Shown here piece after piece: positions 10,537-59,307 of a stretch of DNA of 64,000 nucleotides. Source of the stretch: Amphiscolops sp. MND2022 (lineage: Eukaryota). The notes beneath the pieces are model-generated. The model was not told where the DNA came from and did no database searches. It saw only the letters and a list, made by a program, of their open reading frames with translations. Position 1 is the first letter of the stretch; the number at the start of each line of letters is the position of its first letter. A program made the translations under genes and the position numbers. Location of the stretch: NCBI GenBank assembly GCA_964187785.1, contig OZ076414.1, forward strand, positions 52,018,001 through 52,082,000, written 5' to 3'.

Positions 10537-10671
10537 GTAATAAGCTTCCCCTTTTTAAAATTGCGCACTTTACTAAAATCTAGCTAACGAATATGATCTA
10601 ATAATAATTAGCCAACCCCGTCATCTCGTTTAAAGTTGTACCCTTCATTGGTTAGTGATACTTAGTTTGCT

Positions 10672-11410
10672 GTTGTCGGCGCTTTTTTAGAGTCAACTAT
10701 AGTCATGGCTTTTCGTCAGTTTTTTTTCGATGCACCTGAACTGTCCAAAATAGTTCTACCAAAAGTTCTACCCTTCAATTTTGGCAATCTACATGCTACG
10801 TTTGAACAGTAAAGGAGTCCCCTTCGACAATAACAACCTTTGAACAGTAAAGGAGTCCCCTTCGACAATAACAACCTATACCGGGTTTAACGCAAACTGG
10901 ATATAACTTATTCCGGGTATACGTTTCTTGGAGAATTTTTCAGTTACAAAAGGGTTCCCCTTTCAATTTTTACGATATTTAGAGTTGATACAAAATCATT
11001 TGAAGCCACAGGGCCCCCCTTTGGATTTTTTGGTGTGGTGAGACCTTATTCTTTTCTATTTAAACGAATAGCTGTTTTATTCTCAATACTTTATTATACA
11101 TTGTTAATGCTTTTTTTGAAACTTTCATTTAGTCAAAAGGTTTCCTCCCGCTTTCATGGCGGATTTCGACTTTAGAAAAGGTAGTTTTTCGAGCTGAAAG
11201 TTCTTTTTTGGCACTATAAATTTTTTCTAAAAAATCGATTTTTTTCGAAAAATAGTTTTTTGTTTCCAGATTGAGAAAATGTGGTTTCCGAGTCATATGC
11301 GTATCCTTTGTGTATTTTTCGGTACTGAAAAAGTGATAAAATTTTAAAACAGTGTCCTTTTCATATTCAAGAAACTTGAGCGGGGTGCCGACTTGTAAGT
11401 TCTTGTTGTT
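10672..11410 (+). mobile_element. HINE-like family 1 copy (diverged; internal 38-bp duplication at 10801-10877)
   Basis: TGTCGGCG at the start and GTGCCGACTTG...TTGTT at the end; boundaries approximate. Confidence 0.45.
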
Positions 11411-17470: not shown

Positions 17471-17992
17471 TTTTAGTCGGAGAAAATCCCGACTCTTACA
17501 GTGGCTAGTTTTTTTTCGTCAGTTCAACGCGAAACGTCCACTTTTTGTGCATTAATGCGCATTCACCAACTTTTACCATATGTACTTAGTACTTCATTTT
17601 CAACGCATCCAAAGCCTCTAACATGAGATAAAAAGCCATTCCAAAGCAGAAGAGTCCACTTTTTTCGACACTATGAGACTTTCCGCCTTTTTTCGGCACT
17701 GTGAGACTGATTTTTCCGAATTTTTTTTATTGTTCCTCCCATCAATTTTTGATATTTTGCAACAGAATGGATGTTCAAAAAATCCCAAAGCGTCCCCCCT
17801 TTTACATTTTTCGGCACTATGCGACTTACTGGAAACTTCAAAAAAATTTCGAAAAAAAAATCGGAGTTTTTTTTCTCAATTTTTAGTTTTTTGAGAGCTT
17901 TTGTTGTCTCCAGTTGTAGAAAAAGTGGTTTTCGATTTCGAGTCTTTTTGAGCCTTAGATATGGCGCCGACTTGGGCCGTTCCCGGCTTGTT
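17471..17992 (+). mobile_element. HINE-like family 1 copy, 153 bp upstream of the SART3 ATG
   Basis: Close relative of 58226-58748; subterminal AGTCGG/CCGACT and 3' GGGCCGTTCCCGGCTTGTT. Confidence 0.75.
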
Positions 17993-40264: not shown

Positions 40265-40673
40265 GTTAGTTGAATTTGAAACAGAAAGCGCAGTGGTACT
40301 GTGAAATTTTTTGTATTCTGTTACCGGACGCTTCTTGGAAAAATCGGACATCTTCCAGCAAAAATGACCTGGAGGAATAAGCTAACTTGAATAAATGCCC
40401 CTATAGTTGTGAAACCTATTTCATGAATGTATGGTTCCAACAGCAAATTTGGGGAAAAATATTTCCTCAAGAGTCTGACGAAAAATAGGAATAATACTAT
40501 TCATTTATTTTGCAGGGTGTTTTGATGTGAATTGCTAAAAAGCATCCCAACACTTCATGGGTACATGTTTTGAAATCATTATCTCGACACCATCGCTATG
40601 ATGTGACTTGTTTTTAGCAATGTAAGAAGCATTTCCAGAGTCGGTATTGTTCATGCGAGTCAGGTTGTGTTAG

Positions 40674-40892
40674 GTTTACAGGATACGGACGCTGGGTGGG
40701 TTAATGACGTCAGAAGTTCAAACCCAGCTGTGAAGATTGTTCCCCGATTGTTGTTCGATGGCTGGACCCAGAATGACTTGACTGCCCTTTTCTCCAGTGA
40801 GATGTCACAAGCTGCCGTCGTCGATAAGATCGCCAAGTTCGCCTTGTCTCAGGGTTTCGATGGATTTGTGTGTGAAATTCTGCTGCAAGTTG
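40674..40892 (+). CDS. CHID1: CHID1 exon 2
   Basis: GLQDTDAGW...IVPRLLFDGW...FDGFVCE; donor G|GTGAGT. Confidence 0.93.
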
Positions 40893-41304
40893 GTGAGTTG
40901 ACATTTGAGGTGTGGTAGTTATTGAACAAAAGGTTGGAAGTTTGTTTTAGACTGAATCACCTCACAAACATCGTATTCTTGAATCGGAAGTTTTTCTAGT
41001 GAACTCGAAAAAAACGTGCCTGGTAAAGTTTTTGGCTGGACGTGTCGTCTTTCGAAATCATGAGGTACTTCACGTGTCCGAAACGGTTTTGGTCCTGTTT
41101 AGCGCAAACAGTTTCGTAACTTTAAGTTTTACTGGAAGTTTGGACTGAAATTTTTAACCATGTTTTATTGAAAGAAATGGGTGAAAATGGAAATTTTCAG
41201 TTGAACCAAATGCGTTCAAAAGATGATGACTGTTGTCTTTCGTGTGAAAATTGAGTGGAGGTCTTCAAATGTTGTGAGGAGCATTTATTAAACTTTGGTT
41301 TCAG

Positions 41305-41520
41305 GTTACCAATATCACGAAGAAGCCATCCATTTTCTGAGTATGTTGGGCGAGGTGTTCAACCGCAACAACCTACTTACCATCGTGCCGTTGCCTCCTC
41401 CTCTGAAAGTGGATGGCAACCCGAATGGGTTCTTTACGCCCAGTGACTACAACAAGCTCAAGTCTTCCGTTTCCTTCTTCAACGTCATGACTTACGACTT
41501 CCCCAACGGCAGGAATGCCG
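41305..41520 (+). CDS. CHID1: CHID1 exon 3
   Basis: Acceptor TTTCAG|; FNVMTYDF; donor GCCG|GTAGGT. Confidence 0.92.
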
Positions 41521-43370
41521 GTAGGTGGTATGCATATTGCATCGATACATGATGCCGATACTTTCAATCGACCTAAAGCAGAATTATTACCGCCGCGGAG
41601 AATTTTTTGCAGAGGAGTGTTAGATACCATCCGATTTTGACCTCTCTTCCATCGAAATGCCACTTAGAAATTCGATTTTTAATTTTTTTTGGAATTTTCT
41701 GGAATTCGGTCGAAGTTCTGAAAGAAAATCATGCTTGCATTCATTTGAGCGGAGCCGAGTTTCGTGTTTTGCATTTATTGCCGAGAAATGATGGTGCAAA
41801 AGTGGCAATGAATGAATAAATGTAGAGTACGAACAATTTTTAAAAGCATTTTTGAAGTTTTTTCCTTCAAGAATGAATCATTATGGCACTCAGTGGTCAC
41901 AATTTGAAGATTGAAACATCTAGCGATGGCGGCTCTCCACGAACTACTAGATAAAAACATAACAAAGCTTAAATGCTTCAACATAATCATTAGAAAATAA
42001 AACTATTGTTAAAAATTACATGAGACCTAAATGCGGAAATAACATCAGTGCAAGTAAAACATTTACAGTTTAACATAAGTACAATTAACAGAAATGCTGA
42101 AGATTTCATAAAGTTTTTTGCGATGAAAATAGACCGAAGAATCTGTCGTTCTCGGAAGCAAAAACATGATAAGATCCGTTAACATTTACGAGAAGTCGCC
42201 GACAAAATGTCATTTTGAGTGGTCCCACCTTGATTATTGGGAAATTGAAATTAGAAAGAGCACCGGATGAAATATTCATTGTTGAGACTGGGATGAGCGG
42301 CAAAAAAGCCAACTATTGAAGCAAGAAGATGCAACCGAAGCTGTCTATTAAAATTCAGTAAAGAAACAGTAATGACTGAACATAAATTATTGATATCATA
42401 ATTTATTCCAGCAATAAAGTTCAGAATTAATAATACACAAACATCATTTGTAAAATGACGTTGAAACGATGTGACTAAGTACAATTCAAAGTAATTTCAA
42501 ATGATAAAAGTCTGTAATGAGAAATGCATCAAATAAATATACCTACGAAAGTTGAAATAAAGAAGGAAAAAAGCTAGAATGGTGTAGTTATGAAGGTAAT
42601 TCATGACAGTAATGAAACTTCCATACTTTTAATTGATAGTACGTAGCTGCCAGCATAAGGATCGTAATCGGAGCAAGAAGGATGTGCTATATGAAAAAGA
42701 TTTTCCATATATAGTATATGAAATCGCTTCATATATTTGTAGTGTTCTCAAAATATCCTTGTGGATGTGCTGTATAAATTTATCGGTACAGATATGATTT
42801 GAACTATTATTTTTAAACAGAAATACTGAAAGCCGACTAATTGCTGTATCCACGTTTACACAAAGACGTTTCAAATCCTTTTTCAAAGGAAAAGACACGT
42901 TGTCAGTTTCCTTCAGAGGAATGCATAATAGTTACAATTTATCAGGCACAAAGAAACGAATCAGAAAAATAATGTTTGGAATTCCTCACTGGAAAGTAGC
43001 TACACAGAACATAGTGAAGTGATCCCAATTTGTATGTAAATTATCAACGTAAGAACTCAAGAACATTGATTCGGAACACAAATTTATATTTTGAAACCAA
43101 ATGGTTTTTTATAATGAAGCCTATTTATTTGGTCAAACACAATAGACTGTATTTGATGGCTTAACAGGATTCAGCTGGAAAAAAAACAATTTTGCACTCA
43201 ATTAATCAATAAGATCAATCTATGAAACACATGAATCGCAAAAATTGAACGTTGAGCATACACATAAGCGTAATGAAGCGTAATGACTTTCTGTTTCAGT
43301 AAAGGAAATGTATCCAGTTTCAAGCGAACTATTCAATTCCTTCAAGCATCAGCGGGAACTTGATGACATA

Positions 43371-43554
43371 CCGTAATGCATTCTGAGCGTCTGTTAAAGG
43401 GGTAACAGGAATAATAGCAGAGATATGATAGAGAAATTGCCTTTATATACACCCTCATCATCCGTAATGCATTCTGAGCGTCTGTTAAAGGGGTAACAGG
43501 AATAATAGCAGAGATATGATAGAGAAATTGCCCTTATATACACCCTCATCATCC
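43371..43554. repeat. 91-bp direct tandem duplication
   Basis: CCGTAATGCATTCTGAGCG starts at 43371 and 43462. Confidence 0.95.
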
Positions 43555-45461
43555 AGAGATGGCATAAACCATCCTATTATCCTTAAACCTTGTGTGGCAT
43601 GGATGTTGGCATCAATACAGTCAGCTGGTCCTCTATCTCGAAAGTGTCCACATTGTCGAATTACAATTGCTCCGTTCTTCTATTTGGGTGCACCAGAATT
43701 TTAGTCAAAGCAGATGTGAACTCAACGCTTCTTGCCCCGGTTACTCGATCGCTGAGTTCATCGCACGTTGTTTCAAAATTTAACCCCAGCGACGTTTACT
43801 GGCACAACGCAAGGGCAAGGTGGATTCGGTCCTTGTGCATCGCCCACTTTTCCCGTGCATACGTTGTCTTTGGACATTGCTTGAATCAACTGGAAGTTTG
43901 TTGATCGAAAGTCGAAAATTTTGTAGTTGGGGACGTTTATATCGGTAGGTGGCGCTTTGTAGATATTTACTCTTGTTTTGGGAATCACTGGATCGTTTAT
44001 ATCGAATAATGTGATTTTTATGGTTTTGAAATAGCCGACAACTTTAGGACATAAAACTCACACAGGAGTTACTGGTTTGACGTGCTGACTATACCCCAAC
44101 AGACATCTGGATTCAAGGGACAATTGAGTGAAGGATAGTAGAACATGATTGGTTCCCTCCACATCAAACAAGGAATCGATCTTAAGTGCTAACTTCCTGA
44201 TGTACTTTGAGTTTTTGGCTGGCCTGTAGTAGTTTTTTCGGATTGACTTTTGCATATAAAAAGGTACTTAAGCTTGTACCGGGATGGCAATCAAACTCAT
44301 CTTTTATGACTTTGTTGTATTTCATAGTTTGAAATCTGTCCCGCATGCAATCTTGTTCCTCTGGAAGAGATTCATCACCTTTGATATATCCAGTGGACAT
44401 TACAGATCTGTATCATTAACTAAAACATCGGAGGATTTACTGAATGGTAATATTTCTGAAATACATGAATACATAAATAATAGTCACAAACGCGCTGCAG
44501 CTATAAAAATTTAATTACACGTTCATTTAACTGTTAGGCTTGAAAATAAGTCTATCAAATAAAGAAAACTGATGAAAGTTGTAACCTTGTTGATAAAGGA
44601 GCTACGTTTATGAACTAAGGGTATAAAATTAACAATAACGACCGGAAATTGTTTTCTCTTGCTATCACATGAGGTTCTATGATAAATTCAACGGAAACGA
44701 AAACATCAAAAGAGTGTTGATCACGAACGACAACAGCGCCTTACAACAAACAAGCTCGCCCGCATTCGGGTCGCTTAGGCTCCCTCAATCCCCGAGCAAG
44801 AGATCTGTAAATTTCTACTCCATGATCGATATCAACTGAAAACAGTAATGAACAAAATATGCTCCAAATTTGTTTGCAATACTTTACAGTTTTATTATCT
44901 GGTGGAATTATGATACCCTCGATTGGTTATCCAAGTAATTGAAAAAGGATAGTGGCGATTAGATGGAACTTTACAAGTATTTGCTCTACTAGATGAAACT
45001 AGTCGCAAAACAACCGCCCTAACGTTAACTCCTTGGAACATTCATTCAATAGCCCGCAGACACCTAAATTGGAATGGGGATTGCTACAAAATCTAAATTG
45101 TATTTTTTTTCCAAAAACAGCATACCTATCGAAATTGCCGAAACTTTCAAAAATGACATAACCGTTGAAAAGTTAAAACTGGAGACCTTCTTGCCACATG
45201 GTCGTCCAGAAAGTCAACAACAAGATTAAGTTAACTTGAGAAAATGCATAGCAATTAATGGAACAGGAGTGATTTTAAAATTGAAATACTCAGGTTGCAA
45301 ATTTGAAACACCACAACGTTAAAGAATAACATTATCGAATAAACCAGATTCACAGACTGCCACAAATTCACCAATAAAATGGTCAATTCTAAAACCAACA
45401 AATTGACTGCTGAATCTCGTTCTCCAGACCTAACCACAGACTTAGCCGGTCAGTGTCAGTT

Positions 45462-45662
45462 TTAAAGTTGTAGGCGAAATGCAGCTAAAGACCATGGTTT
45501 CCCGTGAACAGGTAATGTGAAAGAGCTACCATGACCCGAATTGTGTTCTTGTAACCTCAGTAGAACACTACGTTTCGTTTGGCCGACGTAAATTGTTTTG
45601 TAGGTCTTATCGTGCAAACTCACGAGAAGGTAAACGAAACCATTAATTGTATCAGGAATTGG
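45462..45662 (-). pseudogene. GIY-YIG endonuclease domain downstream of the helicase
   Basis: Hand translation: GFVYLLVSLHDKTYKTIYVGQTKRSVLLRLQEHNSGHGSSFTLPVHGKPWSLAAF. Absent from the ORF track because it has no start codon and is frameshifted on both sides. Confidence 0.88.
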
Positions 45663-45899
45663 TACTCAAATTGAGGGTGATTCAATAGGTGCCATTGATT
45701 GAACCTTTGTTTTAGGAAAAGTTCCCATGCGTCGGAGCATTCACAGCCTGTTGTTAGGTTCTATTTCGTGCTGACTAGTAATCTGGAGGATAGTAGCAAT
45801 TGAATGACAGGTCTCACCTTTAAACAACATTCCAGTGAAAAAAGGAAAGAAATTTGTGAAGTTTCAAAAAGGCAAACCGATCCTTTAATACTGATATCA

Positions 45900-48800
45900 A
45901 AACGACAACGACGTCTAAAAGAAACTTAGTTCAATATATAATAATTCAAAAAAAATCTCAAAATTTAGTTAATAATCTTAGGAAAGAAATTGATCTTAGC
46001 GAAAACAGATAGAACCTAACGTGTTTCCTACGACTATCAACTCTCCTGCGAAATAACAAGTCTCCTACGGATTGCAAAGTTGTTACCCATGAGTTTTTGA
46101 ACAGTTAGGGTCGGATAATTTGCTACTGGAGTCTGTCATCCGAACTGATGTTTTGCGCCACTTATGAACAGAATCAGATACATTTCTCAAACGAAAAGTT
46201 CTCCAGGTTAAATAACGTTTCACTGAACAAATTGGGAATGGCGATCGAATCTATTTCGGGAGCAATGTAGAGAAGCAAACTGGAATTGTCATTACATAAA
46301 TCACCTACAATACCAATTTTTCCCTGAGAAAATTCATCGGTATTGATTCTTGATCCGACAACTGTTAAATTATTCATTAGCACATCTGGATAGCAATTGC
46401 TGTTTAAGTTGTCCTGAAGCCCGAGAGCGTCAATGGCTTCAGCAGGAAAAACTAAACGAGAAGAAAATGGAATAGCACCACGGGGTAGAAATTTCAATTA
46501 TTCCACAACCTAACGATTCAAAAGACCCTCTTCCCTCGATTGGTTGAAACAGGGCTTATTAGGTAAAACTTGGACATTAACAAAACACTTCCGCATACTA
46601 GGAGCAGAGAAAAAATCAATTTCTGTGTGGAAGCTACCCGTTGTGTAAAGTAGGTGAAGCAAAAATTTCACTTTATTTCTCGACAAACTTTGGAAAACAC
46701 AACTTCAGGTGGACAAGGTGAAATATGCCTGGTGTCTAACATAAGTTTCAGCAAATTCTTGTTCATTCGAGCATCGCAAAACGTTACTAAACCGGTCGAG
46801 TGTCGGTTGCGGAAAGTCTCGTACCATCTCTGAAGTTCAACCAAAGACGTTGGTCCTTTTCTAATAACAGCACTGCTGCCGTCAACTCAAGGCCTGTCCA
46901 AATTGTTCGTCATTTCCAGTCAAAAGTGTTGATTGGTTTTTCACTAGTTTTTTAGGTGCTTGCCTGATGAAAAACCTGGAATACAGCTCGAGTTACCGTA
47001 CAAAATACAATTGCGGAGGTTTTGATGGAAAACAAAGTTACTTCAGTGCTGAAGCGCGAGTTGGATGCATCTTCAATGTGAACTTTTTGCCGAGCATAGA
47101 AAGTTGTGTTGCGGAAAATTCAATTGCTCAGGTAAATTCAGAACGTCGTTGGAACTACCGGGAGTTTTTAGGTACCGCCGTGGCTGATTGAATTACTTGC
47201 TTTCATAGCTATGGACGAAACGTGAACAATTTCAGTGTTGGTTATTACAACTGGCAACTTTTGAAGCCATCATAAATATTCAGTCTGTGAAACCTGAAGA
47301 GCAGCAACTGGCGCAACAGGTCGGCTTTCATAGTCCTTCTTCTCTTTGCGTATTGCAGATCCGGTGGTTTTAGTACTGTGCAGTTCAGTTGTTGTGAAGC
47401 CGCCCTCAGCAGAGCCAGGTTTGATTTCAACAGTCGCATGCCCTTCCTTTCGAGCAGCATTTTTTTGATGTACTTAGAGCAGACATTTTTAGGAGTCGGA
47501 AAAAATTTTCGACTACTTATGCAATCGTGCTGTTTTTTTTGTTTTTTTTCTCCCGACCTTTTCATGAAAATTTCAAATTTCTCAAAAACTGTCCATACGA
47601 TTTTCACAAAATTTTGCACAGTCATTCTACACCCAAAGGGGCCCCTGCGTGTGCAAAGGCATCGAAATTGTATGGCCTGGATGTGAGAAACATAGCCAAA
47701 ATTTGCCCAAAAATGGCCAAAAAACAGCCGTTTTTTGACTTTTTTCGATTTTCTCAAAAACTGTCCATACGATTCGAACGAAGTTTTCTACAGTCATTCT
47801 ACACCATATTAGAGTCCTATATGTGCAATGGCATCAAAATCGTATGGCTGGGATGTGAGAAACATAGCCAAAATTAGCCCAAAAATGGCCAAAAAACAGC
47901 CATTTTTCGACTTTTTTCGATTTTCTAAAAAACTGTCCATACGATTCGAACGAACGCGAGTCAGAAGGAAAAAGACTTAAGCCGACTCCTTTACCGCATA
48001 TGCGGCTCTGGTTTATCATCAGTTGTCCGTTGCCACTTCAAAGGGTTAGTGGAAATAATTCAGGTGAATTCTGTATGATATATTCACCTGCTGACAACGG
48101 GTACTTGTATTTCTGACATCTGAGGTCATTCTGAGGTGATTAATTAGAATCCTCAGTGTAAACAATTAGATTAAGCTTCCTCAAAAAGGCTGCAGCGTCT
48201 CTGGAATTTTGTTGCGGAACTTTTTCGAATCCAAACTGTTCGGATACAGGATACAGGCGCATCTTGTTTCCAGAGGCATCATTTTTTTGACAAGAATTGC
48301 AATTGTGAGATTGAACAGATGCGCACAAATCCAAAATGTCAATTCATCCCATGTTTGTTTTCAGAGGCATCATTTTTTTCGACAAGAATTGCAATCGTGA
48401 GATTGAACAGATGCGCATAAATCGAAAATGTCAACTCATCCCATGTGTTTATAATTCGCAAAGTAGAGTGAAAGATGTCCTGAAACGCTTGGAAAAAATG
48501 CTTCTACGTGAATTTGATTTTTTTCCCATATTTTCTACATCATCGGCTAGCCAGAAACGCAAGTGGCTATGCGGGAAATTTGCAACAGAATCGTGGAACT
48601 CAGCTCTGCCCCATATTTTAATAATTTGACCGAGAATGCGTTCCGCTGAGTTCCATCAGATTGTTAACAGTTTCATGTCACACATAAAGTTGGAGAGTTG
48701 TTTTCTCCGGTACCTTTGGCTGGAAACTTGGTTTCGATTGCGCTCATGATGGCAGAATACCGAAGTGTTTTTTCATGTTTAAAGTCAGAGTAACAGATGT

Positions 48801-48935
48801 GCCTTTTCAGCAAGCTCAGCATTTTTTTTTGAGTCGCAGACATCGAACGTCAGATCTTTCGAAGAGCGTAATGGTTTTCCTTGAACTTCAATGTTACGCA
48901 CGCCGCGTTTGAAAAACTGACTTGCTGTTGACTTG
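45900..48935 (-). pseudogene. Second, tandem, internally deleted RepHel copy B
   Basis: Diverged duplicate of ~52350-48980; keeps the HUH motif AEFHDSVANFPHSHLRFWL (PHSH at 48563-48574); lacks the helicase core (equivalent of ~50460-49430); interrupted by a HINE at 47489-48013. Confidence 0.85.
47489..48013 (+). mobile_element. HINE-like family 2 copy inserted into RepHel copy B
   Basis: Same termini, hairpin CCGCATATGCGG, internal ~160-bp duplication; inserted in a T run with no TSD when compared with the empty site in copy A. Confidence 0.8.
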
Positions 48936-48959
48936 CTAATTCTAAAAATTTTGATGACT

Positions 48960-51900
48960 ATTATAGCCATATAAATCGATCTTAGCGAAATCATATAAAT
49001 ACTAACATGTCTCCGATGAAAACCAAGTTTTTCAAAGCTCTAACTCGACTAAGGATCACGTATAATTGGGACGGTAACCAAAGGCTGTATTTCTTTTCTC
49101 GAAGAGACAATTGAGTGGCAATTTTTGCAAAGGAGTCACCTATAAGTTTATGGACAGTAAGGGCCATATAGTTTGTAACGGGAATCTGTGTCCTCCGAAC
49201 TGATGTATTCCGCCACTTATGAACAAAACCAGTTACTTTTCTCAAACGTAGCGTCCTCCATTATAAATAAAGTTTATTGCTAAACAAACTGGTCATGGCG
49301 ATCGAATCTTTTTCGGGAGCAATATAAAGAACCAAACTGGAATTGTCTTTACTGGGTATTTCACCAACAATACTGATTTGTCCCTGAGATAATTCTTTGG
49401 TATTAATTGTCAATCGAACAACTGACTCAACCTGAAGGACAACACTTTGTGGTTCTCGACATTCAGAATTGAGGAATTTGATGCATCGTCATTAGCAGGA
49501 ACCCAGTTGATACTGGAATTGTGGCAAATCTCGTCATCAGCATTATTCTCACAAAATGGATCACCTGACGCTGGGATCGACAATTGATGACGATTCATGG
49601 CTTCTATCTCTGCTTCTCGCCGACCAAAAACTTTCATAATGGAAGCATCACTCAAATCATCCCAACTGTTAGCAAAAGAACAATTTTGTCGAATGATTTC
49701 AACAATTGTGGTAATGCCAGCTTGAGGTATAGGTCGTTGCGTCATAAGTTGGAGTAACCGCTGACCAATAGGGTCTAACATTCTGACTAACGTAGTTAAA
49801 AAGTGTGTGTCAAAGATGAACAACAAAATGGTGGATAAGAAAATGTCTGAACCATCGATGTTTGGCAACTGGTTGGTATCCCCGTTACCAATCACAAAAA
49901 AGCCGCCGAAAAACAGTTTATTCTGACGAAGTTTCTGTAGTATTAAATCCATTGTCGCGAGAATTTCGCTGCTAATTAAGCCAATTTCTTCAATCAGCAA
50001 AACATGTAACGACATGAGTAAAGCTTTTCTTTCTGGGTGATAATGTAATTTTTTCAAAGCTCGCTCGGTTGCTGTGCTAGGATCTGCCTTTTTGTTTGGA
50101 TTAATGCAGAAACTACGATGAATGTGATGGCAATTGAAGTGAGACGCACGACGGGAGGCTAGTCTTGTAACGTAGCATTAAAGTCCATTCAGCATTGCAT
50201 AAAGCAAACAAATGGAAGTTATATGACTTTTCCCAGAGCCAGGTTTTCCCAATAAAAGTTGACATTTCAATCATTGTGAGCATGGCGTCGATTGTTTCAG
50301 CTTGTGCATTGAAGGAAAGATCCGACTGTGAAGGAAGTTTAACTAAAGAAGGAATCCAGTGACCTGAAGTTTGTCGGATAGGCTTGTGGGATGTTCGTAA
50401 CATTCGCACGTTGCAACCTTCGGAATAGTTGTTCCTGAGTCGCAGTTAATATTGTCAACTTGCTTTTCAGTGCTGGCAGTTAAATTATTCATTAACACAT
50501 CTGGATAACAATTGCTGTTTTTGTTGTCCTGAAGCACAAGAGCGTAGATCATCTGCGTCAGATTGGTCGAAATAGGGCACATTAGGTAACACTTGGGCAT
50601 CAACAAAACAATGCCGCATACTAGATCCAGAAAACAAATCAAGTTCTGTGTCAAAGGAACCCATTGTGTAAAGTAAGTGGAGCAAAAACTTCAATCGATT
50701 TCTTTGGAAAAGACAACTTCAAGTGGATAAGGTGAAATATGGCTGGTATCTAACAAATACGTTTCCGCAAACTGTTGTTCATTTAGGCGTCGCGAAACGT
50801 AACCAAACTGATCGAGTAACGGTGAGTGTTGATTGCGGAAAGTCTCGTACCACTTCTGAAGTTCAACAAGAGACGTCAATCGTATTCTAACAACAGCACT
50901 GCTGCCGTCAACCCGAGGTCTGTGAGATTTTGTTAAAATTGTTGATTGATTATTTACTTGCTTTTTAGGTGCTTGCCTGATGAAAAACTTGAAATATAGC
51001 TCAAGTTGGCGAACAAAAAACAACTCTGGAGGTTTGATGGAAAACAAAGTTAATTTATCAATGCTGAAGTGCGAGTTGGATGCATCTTCAATGTGAACTT
51101 TTTGTCGAGCAGAGAAACAGTTGTGTTGTGGAAAATTCAATTGCTCACGTAAATTCAGAACGTCGTTGGAACTACCAGAAGTTTGTATGTATCGCCGAGG
51201 CTGATTGAAGTACTTGCCTCCACGGTATTCCAAAGCTAAGGACGGAACATGCACAAATTTAATGTTGGTTATCACAACTGGCAGCTTTTGAAGCCACCAT
51301 AGATATTCAGTTTGTGAAACCTGAAGAGCAGCAACTGGCGCAACAGGTCGGCTTTCATAGTCTTTCTTCTCTTTGCGTATTTCAGATCCGGTGGTTTTAG
51401 TACTGTGCAGTTCTGGAGTTGATACAGTGAAGCTACCATCAGCGGATCCAGGTTTGATTTCAACAGTCGCATGCTCTTCTTTCCCAGCAGCAACTTTATT
51501 GAGGTACTTAGAGCAAAAATTTTCTGTTGTCAGCTGTACATTGCCACTTGTAAGAGTCAGTGCAAACAATTCAGGAGAATACGGTATAATATGTTCACCT
51601 GCTGACGACGGGTACTGGTATTTCGGACATCTGAGGTCATTCTGAGGAGAATAATTGAAGTCATCTGTATAATAAATGAGATTAAGCCTCCTCAAAATGG
51701 CTGCAGCTTCTCGGGAACATTGTTGAGGGTTTTCTGTGAGCCAAAACTGCTCGGATAGAGGATACGGCTGACTGCGACAAATCTCGTTTCCAGAAGCATC
51801 AATTTTTTTCCGACATGAATTGCAATCGTGATATTGAACAGAAATACAGAAATCAAAAATGTCGTTCAACTCATCCAATGTGTTTATAATTCGCAATGTA

Positions 51901-54900
51901 GAATGAAAGATGTCATGAAACGCATGGAAAAATGCTTCTTCGTGGATTTAATTAGGGTTTCCAGATTCGCTACAGAATCGTGGAACCCAGCTCTGCCCCA
52001 TGTTTTAATAATATGAACGAGAATCCGCTCCGCTGAGTTCAACAAATAATCAATCAAATTGTTAACGGTTCCATGCCACATTTGGAGCATGACTGGTAAA
52101 TATAGTTGGAGAGTGGCTTTGTATTCTTCCGCAGCTTTATCTGGAAACATCCTCTCGATTGCGTTCATGATGGCTGAAATGCCATAATGTTTTTTCATGT
52201 TCAATGTCAGAGTAACAAAGAGGTGTGGTTTTTCAGTCTTCATGGCCTGCCCAACCTCAGCAATATTTTTTTCTGAGTCGCAGAGATCGAACTTAAGCTT
52301 TTCCTTGAACTTCAATGTTATGGACGCCACGTTTGAAAAAATGACTAGTTGTTGTATTATGAAGACTTAAATTTAGGAGGATGTCCGATAGGAAAAACAA
52401 ATAATTGCGATTGGATGAAACATGCAATTCCAGGTGACGGGATAAAGCGTGCTCATGGAAGCCTTGAAACCCGAATAAGTGTGTTTCTCGGTTGTTGCCG
52501 AACAAAAAATACGACAAAGCGCCTGTGAAGGAACCATCAGAAGCTTGATGATAAAAATTACTTGGTGACAGCAAAGCTTCCGCTTGTAATAAAGAAACAG
52601 TTTCTCCGGGAATGGAAGCAGCAAAATTTTGGAACAAACGTACTTTTTCGAGAAGGAGAGAGGATTCTGAGGTCTTTTAAATGTACTCAGCACACCATTT
52701 AGTAACAAATGTATAGGCGCGACTGTTGGATCTTGGTGCTCCTCTAACAGGTAGAGTATTTGAGGCTTCAGTTTCGGCAGCGGGTTCGAAATGCAGACCC
52801 GATTCTAGAATACCAACGAACGAAACAGATGAGTCATCCTCGTCATTGGAAAAAAATGAATTAGTACTTTCGTTGTCAGAATGGGTGATTTCTTCGGGCG
52901 GCAAATTTTCAACCACAGAGGACGATCCAGACGGTAGTGGATCAATAAATTGTTCATCGTGCAATTGTGAAAGTATTTTGAAATGTCGTTTACAAAGGGA
53001 AGAAGAACAACGATCTACTGGACAACGCCATGCTGCTTTCCCGGTGCATCTTTCAACACGGCAGATAAATGAAGAAGTTGTTACGTTTACAGACAGACGT
53101 ATCAAATGTTTTGCACATTTAAAAACGTTTTGGCCTCCAAAAACTGCAGTGAGTGGTCTCTGCCAACAAAAGTTGTGTCACTGACGTATAAAAGAACGTT
53201 CCAATTTCGATTGAAATTATTAATAACTTTACTGTCGCGTCTTTCCGGCAATCAAACGAAGGAAAGGATATGTGCCACCAACCTGTGAAAGCACCACCGT
53301 ATCGAAAAGCCAAATTACACAATTGATTTTCAGGCACAGCCACCAGAGAATAAGTATAGGTATGGACTGTAATCGATGAAGGAATTTCACTTCGCCTGCT
53401 AGCATCCTCTGTACAAACAATGGCAATTAAGATGGAGGGTGAAGGCTCCAGTGATGGAAACAAGTCACAAATATCAAACTGAAGCATTTGACGAACCGGC
53501 ACGTGCAGAGCTAAGCAAGATTCTGTTCTTCACAAACTTGAGTTACTATTGTCGCCAAATTTTGACCGATTAAGTTATCAATTGCAAATAACGACTGCAT
53601 TTCATTCAAGGCGACATCAATCACCGGTGATTTGAAATTACCACGGGTTGATTGCATGCGTGTCAATCTGTTCAAACTTGTATTGAATTTTTGGCTATTG
53701 ATGTTCTGAAGAATCAAATGACTGAAATATTCAACGTTGCTGAGAAGAAAAATTATGTAAGTAACCCCGAAACTTCTTCCTGAAACAATCTACATACATC
53801 CTCTGGAATTGAACCATGAACAGAATTATGATGGAGAAGTGCAAGAGACGCAGGAATGGACTCCTTGTGACTATAGTTATTGTCCAAAAATTGCTTGATT
53901 GATGCGAATGAGAAAAATGTCAAATTGGAACCAGTCGAGAGATGTTGATCGAAGACATCGCCTGCTATTGGCAAATTCATGGTGACAATGGACTCAACGA
54001 AAGACTCATTGACCTCATTGCTGTTCTGGAGCCGCGTGAATATGTTACGCACATCCTGTCGGTTCTGAGAGAAAAAAAGTTTCCGAGTTAGGCAACAAAT
54101 TCTGACTTTTAATATTGAACTGTCTAACGCTGGTGATCTGCAAAGTGCTGATACCTTCGTAACCTTCTTTACTAACTGCCATGGTGTAGGTGTGTGAAAA
54201 ATTCCCAACTCTCAATGTGGTGGCATTTCGAGCTTTCGTTGTCACTAAAGCTAAGCGATCACATTGAGGATGCAACAGGTTTCCCAATGGTGATGTGGGA
54301 ACGTGACACATTTTTAAAACAGTTCCTTGTGAGCTGAACAAGTCTCAAGAAATAATCCGTTGGAATTTACCTCGACATGAGGCCCGGCAACAAAAGATTG
54401 CAAATGAATACAGGTTTGGAGGAAATCGTTGCGCATTGCAGTAAGCTTTTTAGAAGATGCTTTGAACGAACGGAAATTGTTAAACCATTTGTTCAACAAA
54501 TGAACAAAAGAAACATGGGAACAGTTCATCAACAAGGTGTAACAACCTGCGGGACTTTTCACGACAGGGAAAGCGTAATCATTCACCTTGTACTTCAAAT
54601 TATGAGCAGTGTGATTGGATAGCAGATTAATTCTTGAACTTGATGGTGAAATCTTGAAACAATGTGGGTCCACTTGGATTTACGTAACCGAGCTGCGAAG
54701 CTACCATGGACCACGATTCATGAAATTCCTCGGGCAACAACGAATAGAAATACTGGCCATTGCATTGATACTCGCCAGAAGGAACAGTGAAACTGCAGAG
54801 TACAGCCGGCCAAGCAAATTTCCATATGCTTTCTCTCAAGTAACACTCACATAAATTACAAACATCTATTGATAGATGTTGTCTAAAGAAACATGGGCTT

Positions 54901-55268
54901 ATCTTGTTACCAAATTGACGCTTGCAGTACAGAGGACCGAGTGATATTGTTCTCAAATTCAGTGGATAAGATGCAGTGCTTTGGCGCAAACATACCGAAC
55001 AAAGCCCTTGAGAAGTAACAGATGGAAACACTCTAGGTTGAACATGTGAGAATAATTCATCGTCAGCAAATCGAAATTTGACACAGTAAGTACATTGGTT
55101 GGAATTATCAAACACTTGATTCACAACAGAAGGTTGGCTCACACTCTCAGTTTCTTCAACATCGATGAAGCCACCAACATCTATGGTTTCATTGAAAGTA
55201 TCCTGCGAAATGACAGGCTGAGAGGGCGAACCTTCGACAACGAAACAATCTTGATTCTCATTGTTCAA
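48960..55268 (-). pseudogene. Helitron/Helentron-like RepHel polyprotein gene, copy A (frameshifted)
   Basis: Successive minus-strand fragments: Cys-rich N-terminus; Rep motif I PHLFVTLTLN (~52200-52230); IIPYSP and SKYLNK; Walker A GKPGSGKS (50226-50249); LLIEEIG; FGG...GDTNQLP; RTQIPV...TVHKLIG...QLYVILSRV. Confidence 0.9.
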
Positions 55269-56471
55269 TCGATTGACACTTGGAAATCTGCCCGTTTGTG
55301 CATTACGCCTTAATTGTCTTCCTGCTTACAAGCTGTCGAAACATAAATCCACATAACAATGCATAAACTAAACTGAATAGTACACCTCAGCCTAAATCCA
55401 AAGCCATTTTTTCCGGTAATGAATTGTTTTGAAAGCCAAGTTCATTAGGTAAATCCTGCAGCTTTAATAATACAAAAGACTGCTGACAAATCCGATAACA
55501 AATAGCAAGTAAAACGGTAAAAAGAACGACTTCATGGGGATGCAATAACAAGATTGCTATGACGGAACTACAAGATAAAAATAGCTGGAAAGAATGGTAA
55601 TGATAACACGATCTGTGAACATTGAGCTGCCCTGAAAAAAATACGCTGTTAGGTATTTACCATTAACGAAAATCTCACTATCAACAATATTAAAGTGTTC
55701 GACAAAACACTAAGTGGAACGAAAAGGTAAACAATGGAGAACCCATTTAATGACAGTGTTGTAACAAGTAAAGCTTCTGAAAAAGGATTATCCGAATCTA
55801 TGCCACTAGCATTACCGAAGAAGTTATTGCAAAAATTTAAGGTGAGTCAGAAGAAAAACACCGAATAATCATTTAGAAACCTAATTACGCAAAAAAAGCG
55901 GGAACCAAAAATTTAGAATTGATTTATTTTAGAAAATTTGTTAGAATCCTATTTGGAACCAACAATCAACAATTAAAATAGATATAAAAACAATTTTTTT
56001 ATCTGATTCACAGTATAGACTGGGAAAAAACCACGAACGTTGCGCTAAAGACTAACACTTCCCTTATTGAAGCTACACTGAATCTATAACAAAAAGTGGA
56101 AAAACTATGTTCTCGAAAAAAATTAATTTCATGATAAAATACTGAAATTGATGATGACTAAAACTTTGATGAACAATGCATCACAATAATCAAGCTAACA
56201 AACAATTGGTCACAACAGTGTATCAAGTTCAAACGAGCTAATACAATCCTGAAAATAAACTTCATGGTTAAATGTTCAATCATTGATGATGACAAAAAAA
56301 GCTAATAAACAATTCATCAAAATAAACAAGCTAATAAACAATTAATCAAAACAATGCTTCAAGATCCAATGAGCTAATACAATCCAAATCAGTAGGAGTC
56401 ATCATTAAAAAATGAAAACAGTAAAATAGGTAATAAAATTGACCAAAACAATGCTTGTCTATTGTATTTCG

Positions 56472-56780
56472 TTATGATTGAAAAATCAGTATTTTTTTCA
56501 ATATCTTGGCTTGAACAAGAACCTGAAAGTTGAAAACGGCGTTTTGCGTGAGATGAACACCGTCGTACATTAATATAGTTGCTGAATTCAGTTTGGAGCT
56601 ATCATCGTGGAATATATATTGGAATCGTGCGGCTCCGTCTCTCAACAATCCATTCATCTCCTGTATCAACTGATGTAGGTCATGCACTTGTGCATCGAAT
56701 CGGCGCACAATGCCAACGACATGGACTACTTGAACTTTAGACTGCAACAATGCAACGAGATCCAAAATGTGCTGGAAAAC
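56472..56780 (-). CDS. SGNH hydrolase-like gene exon 2; joined protein 175 aa
   Basis: Acceptor ACATTTCAG|, in frame; VVGIVRR...MYDGVHLT (block V DxxH). Confidence 0.8.
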   Translation of the reverse strand, partial: VFQHILDLVALLQSKVQVVHVVGIVRRFDAQVHDLHQLIQEMNGLLRDGAARFQYIFHDDSSKLNSATILMYDGVHLTQNAVFNFQVLVQAKILKKILIFQS

Positions 56781-56820
56781 CTGAAATGTTAACAGTATTT
56801 AAATGATGTTATTTGTATGA

Positions 56821-57369
56821 TTATAAAAAAACTCATGATGGGTTGACACAATGTGCCACCTAGAGCTCGAAGAAACAGTCAGGTAGAGAACCACAAATTA
56901 GAAACTTTACTTAGTCTAAATTATCAAATTCAATACATAAACATCCTAATTGGAGACACCTATAATGGTTTGAGGTATAATACCCCACCTAAGGTGTAAA
57001 TGTTATAAAAAAACTCATGATGGGTTGACGCAATGTGCCACCTAGAGCTCGAAGAAACAGTCAGGTAGAGAACCACAAATTAAAAACTTTACTTAGTCTA
57101 AATTATCAAATTCAATACATAAACATCCTAATTGGAGACACCTATAATGGTTTGAGGTATAATACCCCACCTAAGGTGTAAATGTTATAAAAAAAACTCA
57201 TGATGGGTTGACGCAATGTGCCACCAAGAGCTCGAAGAAACAGTCAGGTAGAGAACCACAAATTAAAAACTTTACTTAGTCTAAATTATCAAATTCAATA
57301 CATAAACATCCTAATTGGAGACACCTATCATGGGTTGAGGTAAAATTCCCCACCTAAGGTGTAAATGTT
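56821..57369. repeat. Tandem repeat, 3 x ~182 bp, inside the SGNH gene intron
   Basis: TTATAAAAAAACTCATGATGGG starts at 56821, 57003 and 57185; copies nearly identical. Confidence 0.95.
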
Positions 57370-57496
57370 CAGACGTACCCAACAATGCACTTTAAACATT
57401 TCAAAAATATCAACGACGATTTCCTAGTTAAAATTTTAATACGTAAGACAACTAATTTTACTGTTTAGTTTACACAAATAACTATAAATGTATAAC

Positions 57497-57715
57497 CATG
57501 GCTGGAGAGTGAGCAGGTTGATTTTTCCACTGTTTTAAGGCATTTCCTCCAAGGAACAGAATGACCTGCTGATTGTCACCAACTCTCATGTTTCTTATAA
57601 AACGGTGTACACGCTCGGCATTGGGACGCGCTCCACTAAAAGAGTGAACATCTGTTTGAGGCAAGGAAACAGTTTTTGCCATGGAATCACTGATCAACAC
57701 AAATTTGGACGGCAT
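57497..57715 (-). CDS. SGNH/GDSL hydrolase-like gene exon 1, nested antisense in CHID1 intron 3
   Basis: MPSKFVLISDSM (block I), SFSGA (block II), VILFLGGN (block III); phase-0 donor ATG|GTTATA (weak). Confidence 0.75.
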
Positions 57716-58225
57716 TGCTCTCTGAAAAATAAAAAATGACAGTGCCTCATTCACAATTTTAACTGGAAGAACTCAAAAAAAATGTGAAAAAAATTGGAAA
57801 CTTGAACTACTTGAGAGCATTTCTCTGAACGGAAAATAATAGAATCGGAGCCGATTTTTGCGATTTGGTTTATTTTAGATACGTACTTGATAGCAAATAG
57901 CACTATGTCATTCCTCTGGTGGGGTTCCACTTTTCCGCGACGAATTAGTTTTTTGAATCAAAATCTGTCAGTTCGAGTAGTCACTTTTTTCTACGAAAGC
58001 AGAACCGGCTAGAAGGCCTCACTTCTACAGTCTTTTGTTTTCTCGAAGACAGACACCAAACCTATAAATTGGCCTTTAAATTGGCCCAGTTATAGAGTTC
58101 CGTTAAAGTCCAAATCCCCTGGTGAATTCGGGAATTATCTGAATATATTCGGCTTCCTGGAACTTTTTTGTCACTCGACTTAATGAATTTGATGTACTTA
58201 CAGAGAAATGTTATTTTATCCCACT

Positions 58226-58748
58226 TTTTAGTCGGCGTTTTCGAACAAAAATCCCGACTCTTACAGTGGCTAGTTTTTTTTCGTCAGTTCAACGCGTAAG
58301 TCCACTTTTTGTGCATTAATGCACATTTACCAACTTTTACCATATGTACTTAGTACTTCATTTTCAACGCATCCAAAGCCTCTAACATGAGATAAAAAGC
58401 CATTCCAAAGCAGAAGGGTCCACTTTTTTTCGGTACTATGAGACTTTCCTCCTTTTTTCCGCACTGTGAGACTGATTTTTTTCCGATTTTTTTTATTGTT
58501 CCTCTCATCAATTTTTGATATTTTGCAACAGAATGGATGTTCAAAAAATCCCAAAGCGTCCTCCTTTTACGTTTTTCGGCACTATGCGACTTACCGGAAA
58601 CTTCAAAAAAAATCCGAAAAAAACGATTTTTTTTCTCAATTTTTAGTTTTTTGAGAGCTTTTGTTTGTTGTCTCCAGTGGTAGAAAAAGTGGTTCTCGTC
58701 TTTTTGAGCCTTAGATATGGCGCCGACTTGGGCCGTTCCCGGCTTGTT
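58226..58748 (+). mobile_element. HINE-like family 1 copy
   Basis: Colinear with 17471-17992 and has the same termini. Confidence 0.75.
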
Positions 58749-58933
58749 TGTAAATGTTTAGTCAGCTTGATTATTGTGTCATTTTGCTATATTATACTAC
58801 TTTGACGCTTCATGGGAAAAACTGATAATTTCTGGCTAACGTCGGTTTTTTCTGCCGTACTCCGTCGCTGTTGAGTGTCGCTTTCTCTGCAGTCCTACGG
58901 CTGTTTGCAGTGTGTCCTATGTTCTGTTTCCAG

Positions 58934-59307
58934 GTCCGGTGGCTCCTGCCAGCTGGGTCGCAGGCTGCATGCTCTACTACACAAAGGATCTGCCCGCAGA
59001 GGAACAGAAAAAGTTTCTGATGGGTCTCAACTTCTATGGGTACCAGTATAAACCCCAGTCTAGCCAGCCCGAACCCATAGTGGCAAGCGTGTACTTGGAC
59101 TTACTCAGAAAGCACTCAAAAAGTGCCAACTTTGAATGGGAGAGCAATGCGGCCGAACATATTCTGGAATTACCTGGGAGCCATATCATATTCTATCCCA
59201 CCTTGCATTCCATAAAACTTAGACTGCAATTAGCAGAAAGACTCAATGTTGGAGTGGGTATTTGGGATTTGGGTCAAGGCTTGGAGTATTTCTTCAATCT
59301 ATTTTGA
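58934..59307 (+). CDS. CHID1: CHID1 exon 4; joined CDS 394 aa; preceding intron is 17,413 bp
   Basis: Acceptor TTTCCAG|; GPVAPASWV...LMGLNFYG...FYPTLHSIKLRL...GVGIWDLGQGLEYFFNLF (cf. human GQGLDYFYDLL). Confidence 0.95.

What the first reader, a model, noticed from the sequence alone, without database searches (positions are those of the whole stretch)
56472..57730. Intact, intron-containing SGNH esterase gene nested antisense in a host intron, directly upstream of RepHel
Seen: two exons (57715-57497 and 56780-56472) join in phase 0 to give 175 aa with SDS, G, GGN and DGVH blocks, so the Ser/Asp/His triad appears retained. The frame is undisrupted while the neighbouring RepHel is riddled with stops. 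A strong acceptor (TTTTTTATTTTTCAG) lies 6 nt before the ATG. Established: TE-borne SGNH esterases are known from ORF1 of CR1/L2/RTE-X LINEs and some Penelopes. Inference: it is either element cargo or a gene now under host selection.
Basis: partly seen in the sequence, partly recalled or inferred. Interest (0 to 1): 0.75.

Follow-up and report, generated by a model that had tools for sequence, protein, structure and literature searches.

The report
Esterase gene of a dead Helitron
The small two-exon esterase gene is real and is the regular first gene of a family of rolling-circle (Helitron-like) jumping genes, but the copy in this window sits in a dead element and is drifting neutrally, so the host is not keeping it.

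Summary
On the minus strand, 57715-57497 and 56780-56472 join in phase 0 into a 175-aa ORF with the four SGNH blocks (S11, G28, N58, D146/H149).

It is a real spliced gene. Five diverged relatives found in public assemblies have the same intron position, and an acceptor-like tract lies just before the ATG in each of the five full-length family members. Four of the relatives are followed by a RepHel, which is a single long ORF in two of them, and at least two by a GIY-YIG nuclease ORF. Among family members, synonymous sites are saturated while pN is only 0.29-0.40.

The N-terminal half folds like the esterase of the zebrafish L2 LINE ORF1 protein (best of 48,161 chains, but only Z 5.9).

The window copy is not under host selection. 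A second haplotype of this same locus (L007) differs by 14 nonsynonymous and 3 synonymous changes (dN/dS 1.3). Exons are as diverged as the intron. That haplotype has lost the block III Asn. The window copy has a 1-nt insertion that frameshifts its last codons.

No RNA data exist for this organism. Teleost texim-Helitron is a published precedent. Earlier scan notes report the same gene set elsewhere in this genome.

The parts
57722..57736 (-). Pyrimidine tract plus CAG (acceptor-like) ending 6 nt before the ATG
   Evidence: Read directly. The same Y-tract plus AG lies 5-9 nt before the ATG in L002, L003, L004 and L005, and it is identical in L007.
57497..57715 (-). Exon 1, 73 codons: SGNH blocks I (S11), II (G28) and III (N58)
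   Evidence: The half-model has pLDDT 77.6 with beta-alpha-beta-alpha-beta-alpha order. Its best PDB match is 4c1b, the ZfL2-1 ORF1p esterase.
56781..57496 (-). Intron, phase 0, GTTATA...TTTCAG; position conserved across the family
   Evidence: There is a GT donor at the same codon boundary in all six lineages, and an AG acceptor at the same place in five of six. No RNA evidence exists.
56821..57369 (+). 3 x 182-bp tandem repeat inside the intron
   Evidence: 97% matches. The allelic copy L007 has two units.
56472..56780 (-). Exon 2, 102 codons plus stop: block V (D146, H149)
   Evidence: Homologues are P0002-P0005 and P0010-P0014. SGNH/GDSL esterases make up roughly three fifths of the top 50 fold matches to the half-model, all with E of 0.4 or more.
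56492..56498 (-). A-run holding a 1-nt insertion specific to the window haplotype; it frameshifts the last codons and moves the stop
   Evidence: L007 reads ...K-E-Y-stop at the family's canonical stop. The window reads ...K-K-I-L-I-F-Q-S-stop.
55320..56471 (-). Spacer between the SGNH stop and RepHel, with short local repeats
   Evidence: It differs from L007 by 4.8%.
49006..55319 (-). Decayed RepHel (HUH Rep plus PIF1-type helicase), collinear with residues 5-2178 of the L002 RepHel ORF (2178 aa)
   Evidence: tblastn. Pfam finds Helitron_like_N and PIF1 on the L002 and L003 proteins and a weak PIF1 hit on the window ORF.
46073..48940 (-). Second, older partial RepHel copy (residues about 990-2140)
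45328..45815 (-). Remnant of the GIY-YIG nuclease ORF
   Evidence: tblastn with the L002 GIY-YIG ORF gives 63% identity. PF01541 hits the L002 and L003 ORFs.
43368..44400 (-). Fourth element ORF (begins M-x-x-GYIK), function unknown, decayed
   Evidence: No Pfam match.
58912..59307 (+). Last exon of the host GH18/CHID1-like gene; earlier exons lie at about 40670-40915 and 41292-41549
   Evidence: PF00704 profile positions 55-109, 122-186 and 205-316 appear in order. Read directly.

Best explanation
The 175-aa gene is the 5'-most gene of a multi-gene Helitron-like rolling-circle transposon. The gene order on the minus strand is SGNH esterase, RepHel, GIY-YIG nuclease, then a fourth ORF. In the family, the esterase is a small, stand-alone SGNH hydrolase with no extra domain. 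It has a Ser-Asp-His triad and a Gly/Asn oxyanion hole. It is made from two exons joined across one conserved phase-0 intron, and probably a non-coding leader is spliced on just before the ATG. It has been kept by selection for as long as the element lineages have diverged, so the element needs it. By analogy with the LINE ORF1p esterase, which is its nearest solved structure, I infer that it hydrolyses or binds acyl/acetyl esters of lipids. This could help the transposition machinery at membranes, for example in nuclear access, germline entry or cell-to-cell spread. The copy in this window belongs to a dead element lodged antisense in an intron of a GH18/CHID1-like host gene. Its ORF is still open, but it is evolving neutrally. 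Shown: the gene structure, the synteny, long-term constraint in the family and neutral drift at this locus. Inferred: splicing in vivo, catalytic activity, the lipid or membrane role and the leader exon.
For: Family and synteny. Exon-2 homologues were found by an exhaustive HMMER search and a profile search, and exon-1 homologues by a profile search. Their contigs show exon 1, exon 2, a 1-2 kb spacer, then a RepHel. The RepHel is 2178 aa in L002 and 2095 aa in L003, each a single uninterrupted ORF with Helitron_like_N and PIF1 hits. A GIY-YIG ORF (PF01541) follows in at least L002 and L003, and a fourth ORF is confirmed in L002 and L003. The window element is collinear with this layout.

Intron. 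All six lineages have a GT donor at the same codon boundary, and five of six have AG at the same acceptor.

Selection in the family. pS is 0.76-0.91 (saturated) against pN 0.29-0.40 among five open CDSs. The catalytic residues are invariant in four of the five; L004 reads DKVH, keeping D and H. SGNH identity (43-58%) is similar to RepHel identity (41-54%), which fits long joint descent.

Fold. The exon-1 half-model's best match among 350,542 and among 48,161 PDB chains is 4c1b, the ZfL2-1 L2 ORF1p esterase (Foldseek probability 0.96-0.99, E 0.025; VIA Z 5.9, rmsd 4.3, 62 residues aligned). SGNH/GDSL esterases make up roughly three fifths of the top 50 matches to the exon-2 half-model. In the ESM Atlas, the nearest named clusters for both halves are Lipase_GDSL(_2).

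Neutral drift here. L007 is the same locus: 20 kb collinear, including the host exon. The CDS differs at 14 nonsynonymous and 3 synonymous sites, dN/dS 1.34. Exons differ by 3.2-3.6%, the intron by 3.4% and the flanks by 1.8-4.8%. An omega of 0.3 or less is rejected. L007 has N58K. The window has D33A, G154A and a terminal frameshift. Contigs from a second individual carry the same five exon-2 differences that L007 shows in the stretch they cover.

Function analogy. [quoted passage not shown]
Against: There is no RNA evidence, because no RNA run exists for this organism. Splicing, the leader exon and expression are therefore inferred from conservation only. No sequence method places the protein in SGNH at a significant level. 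Pfam gives nothing for the window halves and one sub-threshold Lipase_GDSL_2 hit (E 0.017) for a relative. PDB sequence searches are blank or at chance level. The fold evidence rests on half-domain models (pLDDT 77.6 and 61.5) with modest scores, because the spliced full-length protein could not be handed to the fold tools. The element's termini were not found, so it is not shown that the SGNH gene lies inside the mobile unit. That is inferred from repeated synteny. A role for an esterase in rolling-circle DNA transposition has no experimental basis.
Confidence: 0.8

Rival explanations
1. The copy has been domesticated. Although the RepHel died, the host now keeps this esterase gene for its own use, which would explain why it is open while its neighbour is broken.
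For: The ORF is open and all five catalytic residues are present in the window haplotype. The window copy breaks only 5 of 49 otherwise invariant columns, no more than the other copies do. Both haplotypes have identical splice sites.
Against: dN/dS is 1.34 between the two haplotypes of this locus, and exons are as diverged as the intron and flanks. An omega of 0.3 or less is rejected at P = 0.008. One haplotype has lost the oxyanion-hole Asn (N58K), and the other has a terminal frameshift plus D33A and G154A. Staying open by chance has a probability of about 0.25-0.4 at RepHel's lesion density.
Confidence: 0.04
2. This is a host SGNH gene, or a fragment of one, picked up recently by this particular Helitron copy through the read-through gene capture for which Helitrons are known. 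It would then not be an element gene.
For: Helitrons do capture host sequence. The teleost texim-Helitron association was interpreted as a capture (PMC4021074). The gene has a spliceosomal intron, like a host gene.
Against: The same gene sits in the same place, with the same intron, in at least five element lineages whose SGNH and RepHel proteins are about equally diverged (43-58% and 41-54%). No free-standing homologue was found. All 25 family proteins (9 by the exon-2 profile, 14 by the exon-1 profile, plus the two loci first found) come from a few ENA assemblies. Every one of the seven contigs inspected was an element, a rearranged element or a decayed array of the gene. An ancient capture at the root of the family is not excluded, and it is compatible with the best explanation.
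Confidence: 0.08
3. This is a chance ORF pair with fortuitous SGNH-like motifs and is not a gene at all.
For: Pfam and PDB sequence searches on the two halves find nothing significant.
Against: There are homologues with E down to 1e-21 for the single sequence and 1e-38 for the profile. Both exons are conserved together in seven other loci, one of them the second haplotype of this locus. pN is far below pS. The motif residues are invariant in all but L004 (DKVH). The fold matches point to SGNH esterases.
Confidence: 0.01

Closest known systems
texim genes next to Helitrons in teleost fish (Tomaszkiewicz et al. 2014, PMC4021074)
   Same: An intron-containing SGNH hydrolase gene lies immediately 5' of a Helitron coding region. 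It is multi-copy in the genome, described as related to CR1 esterases and PAF-AH, and of unknown function. The authors proposed either help in Helitron transposition or a mobilised host gene.
   Different: texim genes have up to 15 exons. The paper found the association in fish only, and not in amphioxus, sea urchin or Oikopleura. Here the gene has two coding exons and 168-175 codons. The partner element carries a GIY-YIG nuclease and a fourth ORF. An exhaustive HMMER search with exon 2 found no hit outside this small family, apart from five repeat-rich proteins that I judged spurious. Homology to texim could not be tested, because no texim sequence was available to the tools.
SGNH esterase domain of LINE ORF1 proteins (CR1/L2, RTE-X, Penelope); structure 4c1b of zebrafish ZfL2-1 (Schneider et al. 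2013, PMC3905857)
   Same: It is the nearest solved structure to the N-terminal half. It has the same minimal size (158-171 residues in the crystal chains against 175 here), the same catalytic residues, and it is also carried by a mobile element as its first gene.
   Different: In LINEs the esterase is a domain of ORF1p, next to a coiled coil or PHD, and has no intron. Here it is a free-standing spliced gene of a DNA transposon. By the offset of the structural alignment, the 'transposon-specific' His191 corresponds to Phe54 here, so a hallmark of that clade seems absent (inferred, not aligned residue by residue). Sequence similarity is undetectable.
GDSL esterases/lipases in giant Penelope-like Terminons and some LTR retrotransposons (review PMC6431247)
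   Same: An accessory esterase ORF in a large multi-gene mobile element. The review speculates that it helps passage through membranes.
Helentron / HLE2-type Helitron-like elements with an added nuclease (AP endonuclease; a GIY-YIG domain reported in a Sphagnum HLE2 family, PMC11417382)
   Same: A RepHel of more than 2000 aa, followed by a nuclease module.
   Different: No SGNH, esterase or lipase is mentioned in that survey. The termini of the present element were not determined, so its HLE1 or HLE2 class is open.

Membership tests
SGNH/GDSL hydrolase superfamily | Four conserved blocks in order: Ser (block I), Gly (II), Asn (III), and Asp-x-x-His (V) | tested here: met
   S11, G28, N58, D146 and H149 are present. 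S, G, N, D and H are invariant across the five full-length family members, with L004 reading DKVH instead of DGVH. The spacing fits a minimal SGNH domain.
SGNH/GDSL hydrolase superfamily | Flavodoxin-like alpha/beta/alpha fold with five parallel strands and the Ser at the end of strand 1 | tested here: inconclusive
   Only half-domains could be folded. Exon 1 (pLDDT 77.6) gives strand-helix x3 with D10-S11 at the beta1/alpha1 junction. Its best PDB match is 4c1b (E 0.025, probability 0.96-0.99; Z 5.9). For exon 2 (pLDDT 61.5), SGNH esterases make up roughly three fifths of the top 50 matches, but all have E of 0.4 or more.
SGNH/GDSL hydrolase superfamily | Match to Pfam Lipase_GDSL or Lipase_GDSL_2 at the gathering threshold | tested here: not met
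   No hit for either window half. One relative's exon 1 reaches E 0.017 for PF13472, and there is none for exon 2. The halves were scanned apart, which lowers sensitivity, and the spliced protein had no reference to hand in.
SGNH/GDSL hydrolase superfamily | Esterase activity | not testable with these tools
   Needs recombinant protein from an open copy with all catalytic residues (L002 or L003 type) and a pNP-acetate or lipid assay.
Transposon-type esterase clade of LINE ORF1p (Schneider et al. 2013) | 'Transposon-specific' residues equivalent to ZfL2-1 H191 (strand 3) and S228 (strand 4) | tested here: inconclusive
   By the offset N195 = N58, H191 falls on F54, which is invariant Phe in the family. 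An invariant His (H93) sits in the next strand. No residue-level alignment to 4c1b could be printed.
texim family (teleost Helitron-associated SGNH genes) | Sequence membership in the Texim clade | not tested
   No Texim sequence was available to the tools. The exon-2 HMMER search of 1.84 billion representatives gave only this family's own members plus spurious repeat proteins.
texim family (teleost Helitron-associated SGNH genes) | The SGNH gene lies just 5' of a Helitron coding region | tested here: met
   True in the window and in L002, L003, L004, L005 and L007.
Helitron-like elements (the carrier) | One protein with an HUH Rep domain and a PIF1-type helicase | tested here: met
   PF14214 and PF05970 both hit the single 2178-aa and 2095-aa ORFs of L002 and L003 (below or near the curated cut-offs). 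The window copy is collinear with them.
Helitron-like elements (the carrier) | Defined termini (5' TC / 3' CTRR hairpin, or short TIRs with a TT target) | tested here: inconclusive
   No convincing terminal repeats were found between 57.7-58.9 kb and 41.5-43.4 kb. No upstream conservation was found between lineages.

The most novel reading that the evidence does not exclude
A small spliced SGNH esterase is an ancient core gene, not a passenger, of a whole lineage of Helitron-like rolling-circle DNA transposons (RepHel plus GIY-YIG) outside vertebrates. Together with LINE, Penelope and LTR elements and the fish texim-Helitron pair, this would mean that unrelated classes of mobile DNA have repeatedly come to depend on the same kind of lipid- or acetyl-esterase. 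That would point to a common membrane-linked step in transposon propagation that is still unknown.
Probability: 0.45. Interest if true: 0.6.

Novelty: new variant of a known kind. Interest (0 to 1): 0.4.

Why it matters
Esterase genes carried by mobile elements have been known for two decades, but nobody knows what they do. Nearly all documented cases are retroelements. The one DNA-transposon case, fish texim with a Helitron, was read as a lineage-specific capture. Here a stand-alone esterase gene with a conserved intron is syntenic with RepHel across deeply diverged lineages of a different kind of Helitron-like element, in what appears to be a non-fish animal. That argues the module is useful to rolling-circle DNA transposons as well, and it offers apparently intact copies (L002 and L003 type) for biochemical tests. 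For this window specifically, the result is sobering: the open frame is a relic, not a domesticated gene.

Tried and rejected
1. Pfam on the two window halves gave nothing relevant. Scanning every member of both exon alignments gave one sub-threshold GDSL hit.

2. PDB sequence searches, both single-sequence and profile, gave only chance-level hits. One correctly placed GDSL protein, 4iyj, appeared at E 0.65.

3. A word-index protein search with exon 2 alone found nothing. Only the exhaustive HMMER search and the profile searches found relatives.

4. P0001 and P0006-P0009 are repeat-rich proteins with no BLAST match to the gene. I rejected them as spurious.

5. RNA evidence: no RNA run holds the stretch. 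The four holders behave as DNA, since intron and spacer are present.

7. A search for terminal inverted or direct repeats of the element found only 11-12-mers. No upstream DNA is conserved between lineages, so the presumed leader exon was not found.

8. dN/dS between lineages is not computable, because synonymous sites are saturated.

9. The spliced 175-aa protein has no reference, so I did not type it into the Pfam, PDB, fold or protein-search tools. Each exon was searched apart, which costs sensitivity.

10. An Atlas search of the host exon gave the GH18 family but no taxon.

Full report
**1. The observation**

On the minus strand, 57715-57497 (219 nt) and 56780-56472 (309 nt with the stop) join in phase 0 into a 175-codon ORF. 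Reading straight through the 716-nt gap meets many stops.

- I-S-D-S-M (S11)
- F-S-G-A-R (G28)
- L-G-G-N (N58)
- D-G-V-H (D146, H149)

The donor is ATG|GTTATA and the acceptor is TTTCAG|G. A T-rich tract ending in CAG stops 6 nt before the ATG.

**2. It is a real gene with a conserved intron**

Pfam and PDB sequence searches on the two halves are blank, and a word-index search with exon 2 found nothing.

An exhaustive HMMER search of 1.84 billion representatives with exon 2 found four true relatives, P0002-P0005, with E from 5e-21 to 5e-8. All four are ORFs that cover exon 2 only. In the two that extend upstream, homology starts exactly at my exon-2 first residue. The other five hits are repeat proteins with no BLAST match.

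Profile searches raised the family to 25 protein clusters, all from a few ENA assemblies.

On their contigs, exon 1 lies 214-555 nt upstream of exon 2. In all six lineages a GT follows the same codon. The donors are GTAAGA, GTAAGT, GTAATA, GTTAAT and GTTACG, and GTTATA here. In five of six lineages an AG precedes the same first codon of exon 2. L003 has CAT there, with an in-frame AG three codons further on.

The 'weak' donor therefore has close counterparts in sister lineages.

In the window and in L002, L003, L004 and L005, a pyrimidine tract plus AG lies 5-9 nt before the ATG. This suggests a spliced, non-coding leader.

No RNA run exists for the organism, so splicing is inferred from conservation and has not been seen.

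**3. What it encodes**

Five open CDSs (168-175 codons) are 43-58% identical. S11, G28, N58, D146 and H149 are invariant, though L004 reads DKVH instead of DGVH.

The spliced protein has no reference, so I folded the exons apart.
- The exon-1 model has pLDDT 77.6 and a strand-helix x3 order, with D10-S11 at the end of strand 1.
- Its best match among 350,542 PDB chains is 4c1b, the esterase domain of the zebrafish ZfL2-1 L2 LINE ORF1 protein (probability 0.96-0.99, E 0.025).
- An independent aligner ranks the same chain first of 48,161, with Z 5.9, rmsd 4.3 and 62 residues aligned. It is the only chain with Z of 5 or more, and other SGNH enzymes appear among the next hits.
- The exon-2 model has pLDDT 61.5 and gives no significant hit. 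Roughly three fifths of its top 50 are SGNH/GDSL esterases.
- The nearest named ESM Atlas clusters for both halves are Lipase_GDSL families, scoring 0.89-0.90.

Each test is weak alone. Together with the motif order, they make an SGNH esterase the clear reading, with the LINE ORF1 esterase as the closest solved structure.

That enzyme hydrolyses pNP-acetate and binds acidic phospholipids and liposomes (PMC3905857). This is the basis for my functional inference.

**4. Its surroundings**

In L002 and L003 the gene is followed, after 1.5-1.9 kb, by single uninterrupted ORFs of 2178 and 2095 aa with Helitron_like_N and PIF1 matches. Next comes a GIY-YIG ORF (PF01541), then a fourth ORF that begins M-x-x-GYIK.

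L004 and L005 have the same start of the layout. L005 has a tandemly repeated RepHel N-terminal part. L006 is an array of dead copies of the esterase gene. L001 is a low-coverage, frameshifted copy.

The window is collinear with the L002 layout on its minus strand:
- SGNH gene at 57715-56472
- RepHel at 55319-49006, with at least 5 frame changes and at least 8 stops
- a second partial RepHel at 48940-46073
- GIY-YIG remnant at 45815-45328
- fourth ORF at 44400-43368

SGNH divergence (43-58% identity) is like RepHel divergence (41-54%), which fits long joint descent.

The element lies antisense in the 17-kb last intron of a plus-strand GH18/CHID1-like gene.

**5. Selection**

Between lineages, synonymous sites are saturated (pS 0.76-0.91) while pN is 0.29-0.40. 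The family has therefore been under purifying selection for a long time.

The window copy is different. The exon-1 profile search returned P0023 (92% identical), whose contig L007 is the same locus. It is collinear over 20 kb, including the host exon, at 94-99% identity.

Window against L007:

| Region | Divergence |
|---|---|
| Exon 1 | 3.2% |
| Exon 2 | 3.6% |
| Intron | 3.4% |
| 5' flank | 1.8% |
| Spacer | 4.8% |

In 501 aligned coding nt there are 14 nonsynonymous and 3 synonymous differences, giving dN/dS 1.34. This fits omega = 1 and rejects an omega of 0.3 or less at P = 0.008.

I polarised the changes with the other lineages.
- L007 has lost the block III Asn (N58K).
- The window haplotype has changed two invariant residues (D33A, G154A).
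- The window haplotype also has an extra A in the run 56492-56498.
- L007 ends ...K-E-Y-stop, exactly where all relatives stop, while the window reads on for a few codons in the wrong frame.

Contigs from a second individual carry the same five exon-2 differences that L007 shows in the stretch they cover. The run that matches the window exactly also holds a second copy about 14% different, spanning the RepHel start, the spacer and exon 2.

At RepHel's lesion density of roughly 2.4 per kb, a 525-nt ORF stays open by chance about one time in four.

**6. Comparison with what is known**

The nearest precedent is the texim gene family of teleosts. These are intron-containing SGNH genes immediately 5' of Helitron coding regions. 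They were interpreted as a capture in the fish lineage and reported absent from amphioxus, sea urchin and Oikopleura (PMC4021074).

Esterases are also known in ORF1 of CR1/L2, RTE-X and Penelope elements (PMC3905857), and in Terminons and some LTR elements (PMC6431247). A GIY-YIG domain has been noted in one HLE2 family (PMC11417382). That survey does not mention an esterase.

What differs here is a two-exon, stand-alone gene as the conserved first gene of a RepHel-GIY-YIG element.

I could not identify the organism. Notes of earlier agents suggest an acoel worm, which I did not test. Those notes also report the same esterase-plus-Helitron gene set on other pieces of this genome. I treated them as leads only, and my own loci agree with them.

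**7. Verdict**

'Element cargo' is right and can be sharpened to 'core first gene of the element family'. 'Under host selection' is refuted for this copy.

As a locus it is ordinary, a decaying relic. As a family it is a moderately interesting new variant of a known theme.

Noticed in passing
window 57722-57736 and 44401-44415 (minus strand); L002 9360-9375 and 19330-19343; L003 9475-9490 and about 20260-20275: The esterase gene (5 of 5 lineages) and the fourth ORF (3 of 3) have a pyrimidine tract plus AG 2-9 nt before their ATG. This would fit a common leader exon, or a trans-spliced leader, feeding several genes of the element. RepHel shows it clearly only in L002.
   Followed up: partly
window 56821-57369 versus L007 about 10386-10750: The 182-bp intronic tandem repeat has 3 units in the window and 2 in the other haplotype, a copy-number polymorphism inside the intron.
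   Followed up: partly
window 47328-53682 versus 55331-57188 (compared with L007): Divergence between the two haplotypes is very uneven. It is 0.6% over most of RepHel and 1.3% in the host flank, but 4-6% around the esterase gene and spacer. This could be a deep haplotype block or gene conversion from paralogous copies. It is unexplained.
   Followed up: no
window 55321-55334: The other haplotype (L007 12057-12362) and a contig of run X1 have about 305-324 extra letters here, at the very start of RepHel. The window's RepHel has no ATG upstream of the homology.
   Followed up: no
window 46073-48940: A second, older partial RepHel copy (about 81% identical in DNA to 50561-51523) lies between the main RepHel and the GIY-YIG remnant. 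It is either a tandem partial duplication or a nested second element.
   Followed up: partly
L002 18340-18440: The 2178-aa RepHel ORF stops 30 nt before the GIY-YIG ORF, and a GTAAGT lies just before that ORF. The nuclease may be joined to RepHel by a short intron rather than being a separate gene.
   Followed up: no
L005 10739-20396; L006 2430-10291; the 814-kb contig of L004: Parts of this element family tend to blow up into tandem arrays. The RepHel N-terminal part is repeated at least three times in L005. L006 is an array of dead esterase copies (for example S-D-Y-M in place of S-D-S-M). Many exon-1 ORFs (P0018, P0021, P0022, P0024-P0026, P0028) lie on one contig.
   Followed up: partly
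window 58248-58500 and 17483-17734: A 255-bp dispersed repeat (95% identical) lies just upstream of the esterase gene. L005, L006 and L007 share such repeats with the window at 80-96% identity, so ENA assembly ERZ25074608 is the same or a very close species.
   Followed up: partly
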